Of a stretch of 64,000 nucleotides of DNA, positions 37,976 through 41,247 are shown piece after piece. Origin of the DNA: Anaeramoeba ignava BMAN (lineage: Eukaryota > Protista > Anaeramoebae); NCBI GenBank assembly GCA_028826165.1, contig JAPDFW010000092.1, positions 434,001-498,000 of the forward strand, given 5' to 3'. The notes under the pieces were generated by a model that saw only the letters and a list, made by a program, of their open reading frames with translations, made no database searches and was not told the DNA's origin. Each line of letters begins with the position of its first letter. Positions within the stretch are counted from its first letter, which is position 1. Both the position numbers and the translations under genes were made by a program.

Positions 37976-38109
37976 CAGTTTGTTTTCTTTTTGAAAATTA
38001 AAAAAAAAAAAATGAAATAAAAAAATGAAAAAAACATTCCAAAATAAAATTTTTTTTTTTGCTTTTTTTTATTTCAAGAAAATTAAACATTAATCTCTTT
38101 TCCAATTTA

Positions 38110-38323
38110 TTTTAAATTGATTATAAATTGATTTAGAAATTGATATTGAAATTGATTTAGAAATTGATTTAGAAATTGATTTAAAAATTGATTATAAATT
38201 GATTTAGAAATTGATTTATAAATTTGTTTATAAATTTGTTTATAAATTTGTTTGTAAATTTGTTTATAAATTGATTTAGAAATTGATTTAGAAATTGATA
38301 TTGAAATTGATTTAGAAATTGAT
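38110..38323. repeat. 12-bp satellite (TTAGAAATTGAT / TTATAAATTTGT), left part, interrupted by the element
   Basis: The same units resume at 40559. Confidence 0.85.
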
Positions 38324-38438
38324 TTATTGGACCCTGAAGCCATAAATAAATGAATCTAAAAAAAAAATTATAGTTCCGAAAAAAAAGGAGAAATTCTCTT
38401 TTTGAATTAAAATCAATAAAATTTGGTTGGTTCAATTT

Positions 38439-38755
38439 GAGAGAGAGTTATAAAAAATTTATAGCCCATGTACTTTGAGGGGGTATACCTACAATAACAT
38501 TTCAATTTATTTCGTAGTAACTATAAATTGCTCAGTCATCATTTCCCTAAATTAAAAAAATACTTAATTCTCCTTTTATTTTCTTTTTTTTATTTGTCTC
38601 ACACTTAATTTCCAATAAAAAAATTTTCATTGATTCAGTTCGAGAGAGAGTTATAAAAAATTTATAGCCCATGTACTTTGAGGGGGTATACCTACAATAA
38701 CATTTCAATTTATTTCGTAATAACTATAAATTGCTCAGTCATCATTTCCCTAAAT
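38439..38755. repeat. Two 114-bp direct repeats (38439-38552, 38642-38755; one substitution) upstream of the recombinase ORF
   Basis: GAGAGAGAGTTATAAAAAATTTATAGCCCATGTACTTTGAGGGGGTATACC...CATCATTTCCCTAAAT occurs twice. Confidence 0.95.
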
Positions 38756-38829
38756 CAAAAAAGTTCCATCATCATTGGAGTTTAAAAAAAAAAAATTCTT
38801 TTCTAATATTTATTTTTCTTTTACAAAAA

Positions 38830-40224
38830 ATGAGTGAACAGATTTCACTGGAAAAACCTTCCGAAAATCAAAGATTTAGGGAGGTTAGTGACCAAGAAAT
38901 TGAGCATGCACAAACCAACGCTACTCCGTCGAATACTAACAGATCAACAGATACATGGATAAAAGTATGGGAACAATATGCAAAGCAATTTGAATTACCA
39001 ATGGATTTTTCTCTTCTTGATTCTGAGACTCTTCAAATGCATTTATCTAAACTGATCCTCCAACTTAAAACTCAGGATGAACAAGAATATTCCTCTTCAT
39101 CAATTTATTACTGCGCAGCTGGCTGGAATCGGTTTCTGAAGGAACATGATTTCAAAGCGAAAAGACCCGAGAGAAGCCTTCTTCAGGGAAGAGAATTTTG
39201 GAAATTTCAAAACATCCTTCATTATAAGATGAAAATCTTAGATGATTTGGGGAAAGGAGAAAAGAAACATTATGAACCAGTTACCTTAGAAGAATTTCAA
39301 GCATTAAAAGCAACTTTTAATATTTCGGAACCTCGAGGACTTATTGGAACTTTAATACTGCAATTCGGAATTTTCTGCGCGTTCAGGGGGGGAGATTATT
39401 GGAGATTAAAAATGGGGAATGTGACTTTGAAAAAAGATCAACAAGAGTATTTTGAAATTCGTTTATTCCGAGAAAAAAATAACCAAAGAGGATTAAAAGG
39501 AAAACATCAAAAATCAAGAGTGACTTATATCATGGATCCATTAGCTGTACAAAATTTAAAAAACTATTTAGCTCAACGGCTTCCCCAGAATAATGAACGT
39601 TTTTTTCTTGGAATAAATGGCTCCAAAAAAAGGGTGCATCCATTCAAGAATCAGGCTATGGGTAAGAACACATTAAGAAAGATCTTACAGGAAGCTTGTA
39701 AAAAAGCAAAGATTCAAAAGAAGATTACGCTCCATTCTTTGAGAACTACTTGTATTACTTGGCTCAATAAAATGGCTGAATCTACTTCAAGAATTCAATT
39801 ATTATCAGGTCATAAATGTATCGATTCAGTGCAAAATTATAATCATGCCCAAGAAGATATCAAAAAAGAATTAGCAAATAAACTGACTGACTTGATCACC
39901 CCTGCTGAAAGCACGAAGCAGATTTCAGAGCAAACTAAGGATAATTCAGAACAAACTAAGGATAATTCAGAGCAAACTAAGGATAATTCAGAACAAACTA
40001 AGGATAATTCAGAACAAACTAAGGATAATTCAGAACAAACTAAGGAGAAATTGTCGCTTCATTCAAGAAAACACTCCAATCCAGAATTCAAAAAGAAAGA
40101 TGATCATTCACTCGCTATTTCCCAAACTGATTTGACTCTCGATTCTTTGGGAACTATTTTCTCTCGGTGCCACATTCGAAATGTGGATATTTACTTTAGT
40201 TCAAAAAGATCCAAACAAAATTGA
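38830..40224 (+). CDS. Tyrosine recombinase, DUF3504/Crypton (KCTD1/ZMYM-related) type, 464 aa, intronless
   Basis: NT.RST.TW, EYSSSS...GWNRFL, LGKG.K, PRGL, catalytic R (CAFRGG), K (EKNNQRGL), HxxR (LHSLR), H (SGH), Y (VQNY); C-terminal (SEQTKDN)x5-6 and IFSRCHIRNVDI tail. Confidence 0.9.
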   Translation: MSEQISLEKPSENQRFREVSDQEIEHAQTNATPSNTNRSTDTWIKVWEQYAKQFELPMDFSLLDSETLQMHLSKLILQLKTQDEQEYSSSSIYYCAAGWNRFLKEHDFKAKRPERSLLQGREFWKFQNILHYKMKILDDLGKGEKKHYEPVTLEEFQALKATFNISEPRGLIGTLILQFGIFCAFRGGDYWRLKMGNVTLKKDQQEYFEIRLFREKNNQRGLKGKHQKSRVTYIMDPLAVQNLKNYLAQRLPQNNERFFLGINGSKKRVHPFKNQAMGKNTLRKILQEACKKAKIQKKITLHSLRTTCITWLNKMAESTSRIQLLSGHKCIDSVQNYNHAQEDIKKELANKLTDLITPAESTKQISEQTKDNSEQTKDNSEQTKDNSEQTKDNSEQTKDNSEQTKEKLSLHSRKHSNPEFKKKDDHSLAISQTDLTLDSLGTIFSRCHIRNVDIYFSSKRSKQN

Positions 40225-40237
40225 TCTTTTTTCAATT

Positions 40238-40289
<52 letters not shown>

Positions 40290-40336
40290 GATTTTCTTTC
40301 TGGTTTTTTTTTTTTTTTTTTTTTTTTATTTTCACT

Positions 40337-40549
40337 CTTCAGGTCCAATAAATTGGTTATTGCCTTCTAAAAACTCAAATTTCGGAATTTATAGTCTGAC
40401 TTAAAAATTTTTCTTTTTTCTTACACTCGTCTCCGACTCGTTGGAAAAATTGTTTATTGCCCTCGTCTCCGACTCGGGGCAATAAATGGAGAAAAATTTT
40501 TTCGTCAGTGCTATAAATTCCTTATTTTCATTTTTAGAAATCAATAACC
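40337..40549. other. Structured right end of the element: internal complement of the left terminus (40337-40351), 60-bp imperfect inverted arms (40355-40414 / 40490-40549) and two CTCGTCTCCGACTCG ears (40426-40440, 40462-40476)
   Basis: Manual reverse-complement alignment. Confidence 0.9.
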
Positions 40550-40558
40550 TATACTTAT

Positions 40559-41220
40559 AAATTTGTTTATAAATTGATTATAAATTGATTTAGAAATTGA
40601 TTTTAAATTTGTTTATAAATTTGTTTATAAATTTGTTTGTAAATTTGTTTATAAATTGATTTAGAAATTGATTATAAATTGATTTAGAAATTGATTTAGA
40701 AATTGATTTATAAATTGATTTAGAAATTGATTATAAATTTGTTTATAAATTTGTTTATAAATTTCTTAATAAATTTGTTTATAAATTTATTAAAAATTTC
40801 TTAATAAATTTGTTTATAAATTTGTTTAGAAATTGATTATAAATTGATTATAAATTGATTATAAATTGATTTATAAATTGATTTAGAAATTGATTATAAA
40901 TTTGTTTATAAATTGATTTAGAAATTGATTTAGAAATTGTTTATAAATTTGTTTATAAATTTGTTTATAAATTTGTTTATAAATTTGTTTGTAAATTTGT
41001 TTATAAATTTGTTTATAAATTTGTTTATAAATTTGTTTATAAATTTGTTTATAAATTTGTTTGTAAATTTGTTTATAAATTTGTTTGTAAATTTGTTTAT
41101 AAATTTGTTTGTAAATTTGTTTGTAAATTTGATAATAAATTTCTTAATAAATTTGTTAATAAATTCTTTTGTAAATTTGTTTGTAAATTTGTTTGTAAAT
41201 TTGTTTAATAAATTTCTTTG
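40559..41220. repeat. 12-bp satellite (TTATAAATTTGT / TTAGAAATTGAT), right part
   Basis: Directly visible. Confidence 0.9.
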
Positions 41221-41247
41221 TAAATACATAATTCTAATAAGCTCAAA

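What the first reader, a model, noticed from the sequence alone, without database searches (positions are those of the whole stretch)
38324..40558. RT-less tyrosine-recombinase element with a DIRS-like internal complementary region matching its own circle junction
Seen: joining the right end to the left end through the shared TTAT gives ...TTTTTAGAAATCAATAACCTATAC-TTAT-TGGACCCTGAAG. Its reverse complement (CTTCAGGGTCCAATAA-GTATA-GGTTATTGATTTCTAAAAA) is present internally at 40337-40373 as CTTCAGG-TCCAATAA-ATT-GGTTATTGCCTTCTAAAAA. One internal stretch is therefore complementary to BOTH termini, and contiguous pairing is possible only after circularisation. Known: this is the logic of the ICR in DIRS1-type YR retrotransposons, and folded single-strand substrates are used by integron attC and CTXphi attP. 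This element encodes only a Crypton-type YR, with no RT/RNaseH. Inference: a single-stranded circle (DNA, or possibly a reverse-transcribed copy) folds into a duplex recombination site, CAATAA-bulge-TTATTG, that the recombinase uses. This would be an ssDNA integron-like transposition mode in a eukaryote. Subterminal inverted repeats are reported in some Cryptons, so novelty needs a literature and Repbase check.
Basis: partly seen in the sequence, partly recalled or inferred. Interest (0 to 1): 0.92.

Follow-up and report, generated by a model that had tools for sequence, protein, structure and literature searches.

The report
Crypton transposon with fold-back junction site
An intact 2.2-kb "Crypton" jumping gene of the amoeba Anaeramoeba ignava encodes only a tyrosine recombinase, yet carries inside a T-shaped hairpin module an inverted copy of the sequence formed when its two ends join, a layout described so far only for DIRS retrotransposons and bacterial single-strand recombination sites, so these elements may move in an unrecognised way.

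Summary
Window 38324-40558 is one intact Crypton-type element of Anaeramoeba ignava: a tyrosine recombinase (YR) only, no reverse transcriptase (RT). It sits at a TTAT in a 12-mer satellite. A 700-bp deletion derivative and two fragments elsewhere in the genome have the same ends.

The stretch 40337-40373 is complementary to both termini (score 47 against 20±2.7 for shuffles). Written as a circle, the joined ends and this stretch form the base of a single ~235-nt T-shaped hairpin (z = -14).

The same layout recurs with unrelated sequence in other Crypton families of the genome (19-38% protein identity). It is clear in F4 and F5, weaker in F2, partial in F3 and not found in F6. In F4-F6 the module is flipped relative to the ORF.

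One strand carries CGAG 19 times against 1 on the other. CGAG faces CGAG (tandem G·A), the triloops are of GNA type, and this strand folds 2.6-7.6 kcal/mol better in 5/5 families. That favours, but does not prove, a folded single-strand substrate.

No read test was possible and no circle was seen. The papers searched describe Cryptons as lacking such repeats. The scan found the same design before on other DNA of this genome (s1-686556, s1-689369, s1-689383).

Verdict: a new variant of a known kind; high interest.

The parts
38090..38323 (.). Left flank: AT-rich ~12-bp satellite (aaattgatttag and variants), which is the insertion target
   Evidence: the same satellite continues after 40558
38324..38327 (+). 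TTAT, left copy of the 4-bp crossover repeat
   Evidence: the same TTAT is present in all copies; the uninterrupted satellite has a single TTAT in the same context
38324..38339 (+). Left terminus (L), 16 nt, complementary to ICR-L'
   Evidence: identical in the C64 and C12 copies
38402..38762 (+). Two 158-nt direct repeats (period 203 nt, 91% identical) upstream of the ORF; a presumed promoter/5' UTR duplication, also kept in the C64 derivative
   Evidence: (D3)
38830..40224 (+). Tyrosine recombinase ORF, 464 aa. Catalytic residues R186, K216, H302, R305, H328 and Y337 are conserved. There is a weak QRICH1-type N-terminal match
   Evidence: PDB XerA 1e-6; identical to the A. ignava protein M0811_01837
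39913..40059 (+). 21-bp tandem repeats inside the ORF, encoding a 7-aa repeat (SEQTKDN) in the C-terminal tail
   Evidence: (D2)
40232..40330 (+). (CTTT)n and poly-T simple repeats between the stop codon and the ICR
   Evidence: D1
40337..40351 (+). ICR-L': complement of the left terminus (15/16, with a one-base deletion; 16/16 in the C64 copy)
40352..40354 (+). ICR central spacer ATT, facing TATAC of the junction (a 5x3 internal loop in the fold)
40355..40373 (+). ICR-R': complement of the right subterminus (17/19), and the start of the left arm of the hairpin
   Evidence: (I1)
40355..40549 (+). ~195-nt imperfect palindrome (T-shaped hairpin module). The arms are ~40355-40414 and 40490-40549, with two apical 'ears' at ~40421-40446 and 40453-40486
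   Evidence: (I1, I6, I16)
40426..40440 (-). Apical motif, read on the minus strand as CGAG-TC-GGA-GA-CGAG (copy 1)
40462..40476 (-). Apical motif, read on the minus strand as CGAG-TC-GGA-GA-CGAG (copy 2), enclosed by the TTTATTGCCC / GGGCAATAAA stem
40531..40554 (+). Right terminus arm (R) plus the central TATAC
40555..40558 (+). TTAT, right copy of the crossover repeat
40559..41230 (.). Right flank: continuation of the satellite

Best explanation
This is an intact, recently mobile Crypton of Anaeramoeba ignava: a DNA transposon that encodes only a tyrosine recombinase, of the QRICH1/DUF3504 'CryptonA-like' lineage. It integrated by conservative site-specific recombination at a TTAT in a satellite (shown by sequence).

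Its attachment site is not a simple end-to-end junction. In the circular form, the joined ends and the internal stretch 40337-40373 are the two sides of the basal stem of a ~235-nt T-shaped fold-back module (shown in silico and by conservation across families). The crossover point lies at the edge of a small central bulge in this stem: TATAC opposite ATT, flanked by CAATAACC/GGTTATTG and TTATTGG/CCAATAA.

Most likely mechanism (inferred):
- The module works as folded single-stranded DNA of one particular strand, the one that reads CGAG.
- The ICR supplies the complementary strand that turns the two termini into one duplex recombinase site.
- On an integrated single strand the ICR acts as a splint that brings the left and right ends together for excision.
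- In a single-stranded circle it forms an attP(+)/attC-like hairpin site for one-strand exchange with a TTAT target, and replication completes the event.

Confidence is about 0.9 that the ICR/fold-back is a real, selected cis-element of these Cryptons. It is about 0.4-0.45 that it is used in single-stranded form.
For: - **Ends and ICR.** Both are verified. The ICR alignment is z≈10 in the window copy and z≈15 in the C64 copy.
- **Fold.** The circularly permuted 252-255 nt fold into one hairpin of -58.7 kcal/mol, against -15±3 for shuffles (z≈-14).
- **Family-level co-variation.**
  - F4 (C146/C107; ends defined from two 97%-identical copies) has an ICR with z≈12.
  - F5 (C61) has a 29/30 complement of the post-module stretch 250 nt beyond the stop codon; 0/500 shuffles reach it.
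  - F2 (C78/C104) has its best hit at the expected place, z 4-4.6.
  - F3 has a 10/10 L/L' match.
  - A detector that ignores the known ends returns the true ICR as its top candidate in F1, F4 and F5.
- **Constant geometry.** The ICR centre is 2-3 nt shorter than the junction centre in F1, F2 and F4. The end-to-end boundary lies at the 5' edge of the central bulge on the CGAG strand. The order 5'-short piece | junction | arm-apex-arm | ICR-3' on that strand holds, although the ORF is flipped between F1-3 and F4-6.
- **One-strand features.**
  - CGAG occurs 19 times and CTCG once in the modules of five families, and CGAG is the top GC-rich tetramer.
  - CGAG faces CGAG at mirrored positions in the arms (F4, F5, and the metagenome relative L080).
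  - The apical mini-hairpin CGAG-NN-loop-N'N'-CGAG has covarying NN: TC/GA, CC/GG, AC/GT, TGGG/CCCA.
  - The CGAG strand is more stable in 5/5 families, by 5.1, 7.6, 5.8, 2.9 and 2.6 kcal/mol.
- **Protein.** It is a bona fide YR. Its nearest non-Anaeramoeba relatives carry QRICH1+DUF3504+Phage_integrase and no RT.
Against: - There is no direct evidence of any circle or of ssDNA.
- A palindrome that spans the junction equally fits double-stranded models (cruciform, or paired recombinase-binding sites).
- The strand energy differences are small. The sign test is only 5/5, and G·T counts in F1 are not biased (2 vs 2; 0 vs 3 in C64).
- F2's ICR is weak, and F6 shows no detectable R' partner.
- The window copy's own ICR has a 1-nt deletion relative to its left end.
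- Each family has only one or two full copies, so co-variation within a family cannot be tested.
- No source of single-stranded DNA in a eukaryotic nucleus is identified for this element.
Confidence: 0.42

Rival explanations
1. Double-stranded reading. The element moves as an ordinary double-stranded Crypton circle. The junction-spanning palindrome serves either as a cruciform or as two inverted sets of recombinase- or host-factor-binding sites (junction and ICR) that assemble the synaptic complex, like accessory or arm sites. The ICR itself is not a crossover site because its spacer is too short.
For: - The standard Crypton model is a ds circle (PMC3212892), and clean excisions are seen in Chlamydomonas (PMC9977147).
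- The ICR spacer is 2-3 nt shorter than that of the junction.
- AT-rich 235-bp palindromes extrude readily (general knowledge).
- A metagenome relative (L078) has ~95-bp TIRs, so its circle junction would also be palindromic.
Against: - It does not explain why CGAG sits in direct orientation at mirrored positions of an otherwise inverted repeat.
- It does not explain the 19:1 strand bias, the GNA triloops on one strand only, or the consistently more stable strand.
- Complementarity is kept along whole ~100-nt arms while the sequence is replaced between families. That points to pairing rather than to protein motifs.
Confidence: 0.3
2. Flip or amplification switch. Junction and ICR are two inverted recombination sites on the circle or in the chromosome, and the recombinase inverts the segment between them. 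This would resemble FLP/FRT in the yeast 2-micron plasmid, for example to amplify or to regulate the element.
For: Two inverted copies of the same site flank the module. The ORF is inverted relative to the module between F1-3 and F4-6.
Against: - The central regions differ in both length and sequence (TATAC vs AAT when read in the same sense), which blocks normal YR strand exchange.
- Both copies of F1, of F2 and of F4 have the same orientation.
- A junction x ICR inversion would reverse the junction/ICR polarity on the CGAG strand, yet that polarity is conserved in F1, F2, F4 and F5 (and reasoning in the report).
Confidence: 0.08
3. DIRS-like retro-route in trans. The element is transcribed without its extreme ends, copied by a reverse transcriptase supplied by another element, and the ICR restores and joins the ends as in DIRS-1.
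For: - The ICR logic matches DIRS-1, whose 88-nt ICR is complementary to 33 nt of the left end and 55 nt of the right end and is essential (PMC7192593).
- The genome has at least 17 RVT_1 loci, several with long open frames.
Against: - There is no RT, RNase H or gag inside any of the five families, whose ends are sharply defined.
- No YR/RT pairs occur in the genome, apart from one RT fragment lying outside F5 on the opposite strand.
- The protein's relatives are Crypton-type (QRICH1/DUF3504), not DIRS.
- There are no ITRs.
- The ICR is not an exact copy of the junction (2-3 nt shorter), so it could not template faithful end restoration.
- The module lies antisense to the ORF in F1-3 and sense in F4-6, which does not fit an mRNA-based template.
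Confidence: 0.06
4. Neutral by-product. The internal stretch is a relic of an accidental head-to-head dimer, a nested self-insertion or a replication fold-back, and has no function.
For: Palindromic rearrangements are common around transposon ends. The C55 copy is rearranged exactly at the ICR.
Against: The same architecture, geometry and strand polarity recur in families whose DNA is unalignable and whose proteins share 19-38% identity. The CGAG and hairpin features extend to a metagenome relative.
Confidence: 0.03

Closest known systems
Cryptons (YR-only eukaryotic DNA transposons; Goodwin et al. 2003; Kojima & Jurka 2011, PMC3212892), especially the DUF3504/QRICH1 'CryptonA' lineage (PMC13465315)
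   Same: A single ORF encodes a tyrosine recombinase with the full catalytic set. There is no RT. A 4-bp direct repeat (TTAT) at both ends matches a single copy in the target, as the circle-integration model predicts. The nearest outside relatives carry QRICH1+DUF3504+Phage_integrase.
   Different: Published Cryptons are described as having neither TIRs nor long repeats. This element, and at least three sister families, have a ~235-nt junction-spanning palindrome with an ICR, a T-shaped apex and a strand-specific CGAG motif. The element's own protein gives no DUF3504 hit and only a sub-threshold QRICH1 hit.
DIRS-1-type retrotransposons and their internal complementary region (Cappello et al. 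1985; PMC7192593)
   Same: One internal stretch lying next to the right end is complementary to the left terminus on one side and the right terminus on the other. Pairing is therefore contiguous only across the circle junction. Both encode a YR.
   Different: There is no RT, RNase H, gag or methyltransferase, and no left/right ITRs. The ICR is imperfect and 2-3 nt shorter than the junction at its centre (the DIRS-1 ICR is an exact 88-nt complement). The ICR continues into a long hairpin. The YR belongs to the Crypton lineage, not the DIRS lineage.
Folded single-strand recombination sites of bacterial YRs: CTXphi attP(+) (two inverted XerCD sites folding into a forked hairpin) and integron attC (own knowledge)
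   Same: Two inverted half-site pairs separated by ~200 nt would fold into a hairpin. Its stem is the recombinase site, with an unpaired central region. The features are strand-specific. The crossover lies next to the bulge, with a short conserved target core (TTAT, compare GTT).
   Different: This is a eukaryotic nuclear transposon. No ssDNA stage has been demonstrated. The hairpin is much longer and T-shaped. The recombinase is only distantly related (PDB XerA 1e-6; IntI4 0.02).
T-shaped terminal hairpins of parvovirus/AAV ITRs (own knowledge)
   Same: A ~200-nt terminal palindrome with two small apical arms, and stable mini-hairpins on one strand.
   Different: Parvoviral ITRs are processed by an HUH Rep nickase and serve rolling-hairpin replication. 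Here the only enzyme is a YR, and the hairpin lies 9 nt inside the right end of an integrated element.

Membership tests
Crypton (YR-only DNA transposon) | Encodes a tyrosine recombinase with the catalytic R-K-H-R-H/W-Y residues | tested here: met
   Pfam Phage_integrase 1e-16. R186, K216, H302 and R305 are invariant in A1, and H328 and Y337 are invariant in A2. PDB XerA 1e-6.
Crypton (YR-only DNA transposon) | No reverse transcriptase, RNase H or other transposase within the element | tested here: met
   The YR is the only non-repeat ORF between the satellite flanks. The ends are fixed by other copies.
Crypton (YR-only DNA transposon) | Short (4-6 bp) direct repeat at both termini, identical to a single target copy (the crossover sequence); no TSD from a staggered cut | tested here: met
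   TTAT is at both ends in all copies, and the uninterrupted satellite shows gatTTATaaattt with one TTAT.
Crypton (YR-only DNA transposon) | Excision and integration through an extrachromosomal circle | not testable with these tools
CryptonA subgroup | DUF3504 / QRICH1-type domains in the recombinase | tested here: inconclusive
   The element's own protein scores QRICH1 at 20.7 bits, below the 30.8 cut-off, with no DUF3504 hit. The nearest non-Anaeramoeba relatives carry both domains.
DIRS-like retrotransposons | RT/RNase H (and usually gag, methyltransferase) encoded with the YR | tested here: not met
   The RT loci of the genome are elsewhere.
DIRS-like retrotransposons | Inverted terminal repeats at the left and right ends | tested here: not met
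   The inverted repeats are both at the 3' end (ICR/arm and arm/R). The left end shares only 16 nt with the ICR.
DIRS-like retrotransposons | Internal complementary region matching both termini contiguously | tested here: met
   It is imperfect and 2 nt shorter at the centre.
Folded-ssDNA YR substrates (CTXphi attP(+), integron attC) | Two inverted sites that fold into a hairpin with an unpaired central region | tested here: met
   In silico only: (5x3 internal loop; z -14).
Folded-ssDNA YR substrates (CTXphi attP(+), integron attC) | Recombination of one specific single strand | not testable with these tools
   Only indirect evidence: the CGAG strand bias, tandem G·A pairs, GNA loops and the more stable strand.

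The most novel reading that the evidence does not exclude
Cryptons of this lineage transpose through folded single-stranded DNA. On one strand (the CGAG strand) the ICR splints the two ends into a duplex site. The recombinase cuts at the 5' edge of the central bulge and releases or integrates a single-stranded circle by one-strand exchange, and replication completes the event. This copy-out mode would be the first ssDNA tyrosine-recombinase transposition in a eukaryote. It would explain why active Cryptons gain copies despite clean excisions. It would also imply that the DIRS ICR was inherited from a Crypton ancestor as a recombinase device, not invented for reverse transcription.
Probability: 0.3. 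Interest if true: 0.92.

Novelty: new variant of a known kind. Interest (0 to 1): 0.78.

Why it matters
Cryptons are the least understood class of eukaryotic DNA transposons. Their cis-requirements are unknown, and they are described as having no terminal structure. The only direct observations of activity (Chlamydomonas, PMC9977147) show clean excision yet net copy gain, which the authors call "a complex mode of transposition".

A conserved, junction-spanning fold-back site with an ICR gives a concrete, mutable cis-element to test. It links Cryptons structurally to DIRS retrotransposons, whose ICR is essential but mechanistically unclear downstream of cDNA synthesis (PMC7192593). It also raises the possibility that folded-ssDNA recombination, known from integrons and CTXphi, exists in eukaryotes.

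The element is small (2.2 kb) and intact. It has a natural 700-bp non-autonomous partner, which makes it a practical experimental system and a possible recombinase tool.

Tried and rejected
- **Junction in the assembly.** A pattern search for the circle junction with up to 3 mismatches found 0 hits.
- **First hairpin/ICR detector.** The version based on local self-alignment failed even on the known cases and was replaced. The 'reversed sequence' control is invalid, because reversal preserves inverted repeats, and is not used.
- **F6 (C60).** No right-end partner for the post-module stretch was found (22 vs 19.4±3.0; 102/500 shuffles reach it).
- **C89 tandem copies.** These are degenerate fragments and give no information on ends.
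- **Word-seeded protein search.** It found only the protein itself. The exhaustive profile search was needed.
- **The search for related loci.** Alignment A1 had no usable conserved stretch. With A2 it gave only 5 short metagenome contigs. Some have hairpins near the ORF, but their ends are undefined and they have no CGAG.
- **Rfam.** No family matches at E≤1 in 38000-41000, so the module is not a known RNA.
- **RNA-level explanation** (terminator, UTR hairpin). Rejected because the left-end/ICR complementarity spans the whole ORF, and because the module is antisense to the ORF in F1-3 but sense in F4-6.
- **G·T wobble counts as a strand test.** They are suggestive in F2, F4, F5 and F6 but not in F1, so they are treated as weak evidence.
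Full report
**What is there.** The window is contig C82:434001-498000 of a 42.8-Mb assembly. The ORF product is identical to the Anaeramoeba ignava protein M0811_01837. Between two stretches of an AT-rich ~12-bp satellite lies a 2,235-bp insert, 38324-40558. It holds one real ORF, 38830-40224 (464 aa). The ORF matches Pfam Phage_integrase at 1e-16. Its catalytic R186, K216, H302, R305, H328 and Y337 are conserved in alignments with relatives. Its best solved relative is archaeal XerA (1e-6). Nothing inside the insert resembles RT or RNase H.

**The termini are real.** A DNA search of the whole genome found three related pieces:
- A 700-bp internal-deletion derivative at C64:451004-451706, made of element positions 1-439 joined to 1992-2235.
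- A rearranged copy at C55:619772-620183.
- A left-end fragment at C12:52410.

These lie in different satellites but begin with the same TTATTGGACCCTGAAG and end with the same CAATAACCTATACTTAT. The uninterrupted satellite contains the context gatTTATaaattt with a single TTAT. The two TTATs are therefore the crossover sequence of a conservative recombination, as in the Crypton model (PMC3212892).

The reverse complement of the junction aligns to 40337-40373 with score 47, against about 20±2.7 for shuffles. In the C64 copy the match is better (z≈15), with 16/16 for the left end.

This stretch is only the base of a larger structure. 40355-40549 is a long imperfect palindrome. When the element is written as a circle, ICR, palindrome, right end and left end fold into a single ~235-nt hairpin with a forked apex. 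Its energy is -58.7 kcal/mol against -15±3 for shuffles (z≈-14). The junction sits in the basal stem. CAATAACC pairs with GGTTATTG, TTATTGG pairs with CCAATAA, and TATAC faces ATT as a 5x3 internal loop.

**The design is conserved with different sequence.** A six-frame search found other Crypton families in the genome. Their proteins are 19-38% identical to this one, and F4, F5 and F6 share no detectable DNA similarity with one another.
- **F4 (C146, C107).** The ends were defined by comparing two 97%-identical copies in different flanks. The reverse-complemented junction hits an internal stretch with z≈12. The permuted region folds with z=-11.
- **F5 (C61).** This is a single copy. The 30 nt that follow the module have a 29/30 complement 250 nt beyond the stop codon. 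None of 500 shuffles reach that score.
- **F2 (C78, C104).** The copies are 99% identical, and a diverged third 3' end at C141 confirms the right end. The best hit is at the expected place but weak, z 4-4.6. The fold has z=-7.3.
- **F3 (C1).** This is a dead, 3'-truncated copy. It has TTAATGAACC at its left end and GGTTCATTAA after the ORF, followed by GGTTATTGATT.
- **F6 (C60).** It has the module, but no right-end partner was detected.
- A detector that ignores the known ends returns the true ICR as its top candidate in F1, F4 and F5.

**Geometry and polarity are constant.**
- The ICR centre is 2-3 nt shorter than the junction centre in F1, F2 and F4.
- In F1-F3 the module lies 3' of the ORF. 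In F4-F6 it lies 5' of the ORF and is flipped.
- Read on the strand that carries CGAG, the order is always 5'-short terminal piece | junction | arm-apex-arm | ICR-3'. The end-to-end boundary is at the 5' edge of the central bulge.
- A simple junction x ICR inversion would reverse this polarity. The conserved polarity therefore argues against a flip-flop switch.

**Strand-specific features.**
- In the modules of five families, CGAG occurs 19 times on one strand and CTCG once. CGAG is by far the commonest GC-rich tetramer.
- In the arms of F4 and F5, and of the metagenome relative L080, CGAG faces CGAG. This gives C·G, G·A, A·G, G·C.
- At the apex every family has CGAG-NN-loop-N'N'-CGAG with covarying NN: TC/GA, CC/GG, AC/GT, and TGGG/CCCA in L080.
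- The loops GGA and GCA are of the GNA type. From general knowledge, tandem sheared G·A in a YGAR context and GNA triloops stabilise single-stranded DNA hairpins. Their complements (tandem T·C, pyrimidine loops) do not.
- The CGAG strand folds 2.6-7.6 kcal/mol better in 5/5 families.
- G·T counts favour the same strand in F2, F4, F5 and F6 but not in F1.
- These features are hard to explain for duplex DNA. They are also hard to explain for mRNA, because the strand is antisense to the ORF in F1-3 and sense in F4-6.

**What it belongs to.** An exhaustive profile search gave 12,090 relatives at E≤0.001. After the A. ignava paralogues, the best are from marine and other metagenomes, Amoeboaphelidium and Branchiostoma. 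The long relatives carry QRICH1+DUF3504+Phage_integrase and no RT. That is the CryptonA signature (PMC3212892, PMC13465315). The element meets the tested defining features of a Crypton and fails those of DIRS except for the ICR.

**Novelty against the literature.** Cryptons are said to have "neither terminal inverted repeats nor long direct repeats" (PMC3212892). [quoted passage not shown] Full-text searches for Crypton together with ICR, hairpin, palindrome or subterminal repeat found nothing that describes this. Nothing was found on Anaeramoeba transposons either. The DIRS-1 ICR is an exact 88-nt complement (33 nt left + 55 nt right) and is essential at a step after cDNA synthesis (PMC7192593). 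Active Chlamydomonas Cryptons excise cleanly yet increase in copy number (PMC9977147).

**Beyond Anaeramoeba (leads only; ends undefined).**
- L080 (metagenome) has a 165-nt 5' hairpin with four CGAGT on one strand. A core-like site GTGCAATA-N7-TATTGCAC follows it, and there are five 30-bp repeats containing GTGCAATAACAG.
- L079 encodes the closest outside protein. It has a ~40-bp-stem hairpin 3' of the ORF, built on GGTTATTG/CAATAACC, the same words as the F1 arms.
- L078 is flanked by ~95-bp TIRs with GGAGGTGTATA-N7-TATACACCTCC sites.

**What could not be done.** I did not try another route, so there is no read-level test for circles, empty sites or strand bias. The junction is not present in the assembly. 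The genome does contain RT genes, but none lies within or is paired with these elements.

**Earlier notes of this scan.** Three follow-ups (s1-686556, s1-689369, s1-689383) described the same design on other pieces of this genome. A first-stage note on this window (s1-704417) described the T-shaped hairpin with GNA ears. I used them as leads and re-derived the claims here.

**Verdict.** The structure is real, conserved and undescribed for Cryptons. Its use as folded single-stranded DNA is the best-supported mechanism but remains an inference (about 0.4).

Noticed in passing
L078:3230-3320 and L078:5520-5610 (metagenome contig ERZ28496113:ctg6511): A QRICH1+DUF3504+integrase ORF is flanked by ~95-bp terminal inverted repeats. 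These contain GGAGGTGTATA-N7-TATACACCTCC core-like sites plus a third copy of the arm (FRT-like). The outer flanks are also mutually inverted. This contradicts the textbook statement that Cryptons lack TIRs, or else it shows insertion into a palindromic target.
   Followed up: partly
L080:1-185 and L080:2255-2445 (metagenome contig ERZ25039475:contig_73919): A distant relative has a 165-nt 5' hairpin in which CGAG faces CGAG twice. A GTGCAATA-AGAGATT-TATTGCAC site follows it, and five tandem 30-bp repeats containing GTGCAATAACAG lie 3' of the ORF. The CGAG/hairpin device therefore predates Anaeramoeba.
   Followed up: partly
L079:1620-1698 (TARA scaffold, closest non-Anaeramoeba protein P0006): A near-perfect ~40-bp-stem hairpin sits 70 nt after the stop codon. 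It is built on CTGGTTATTGACC / GGTCAATAACCAG, the same GGTTATTG/CAATAACC words as the window element's ICR-R' and right end. This may be the recombinase half-site.
   Followed up: no
L006:1500-1915 (C55:619772-620183): In this rearranged non-autonomous copy, the left end lacks its first 6 nt. The left arm and apex of the module are replaced by 49 nt that repeat the left flank (attgatctgctttcttt). The break is exactly after CTTCAGGGTCCAAT, that is, inside the ICR.
   Followed up: no
window 38402-38762: Two 158-nt direct repeats (period 203 nt, 91% identical) lie upstream of the recombinase start and are retained in the 700-bp derivative. Another first-stage note (s1-704738) points to a shared AATTTATAG motif with the hairpin arms.
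   Followed up: no
window 39913-40059 and 40232-40330: The recombinase C-terminal tail contains about six 21-bp tandem repeats encoding SEQTKDN. The 3' UTR is (CTTT)n plus poly-T. F2 and F4 have analogous T-rich microsatellites between the stop codon and the cis-elements, and F6 carries a ~400-bp (TTA)n array between module and ORF.
   Followed up: no
window 38090-38323, 40559-41230; L002, L005, L016, L017, L023: Most copies of F1-F4 examined sit inside AT-rich tandem-repeat arrays (6- or 12-bp units or longer). The exception is the left flank of F2 at C78. This reflects either a target preference for TTAT/ATAA-type satellite words or survival in safe havens.
   Followed up: partly
G000:C61:374834-375157: An RVT_1 fragment (191-aa open frame) lies ~700 bp outside the ICR-defined left end of the F5 Crypton, on the opposite strand. 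The public 744-aa gene model P0003 at this locus may merge unrelated pieces.
   Followed up: no
G000:C89:84000-90500 (L071): Two tandem 1.7-kb units (96% identical) hold degenerate fragments of an F2-like recombinase with stop codons, embedded in an aaattatttt satellite.
   Followed up: partly
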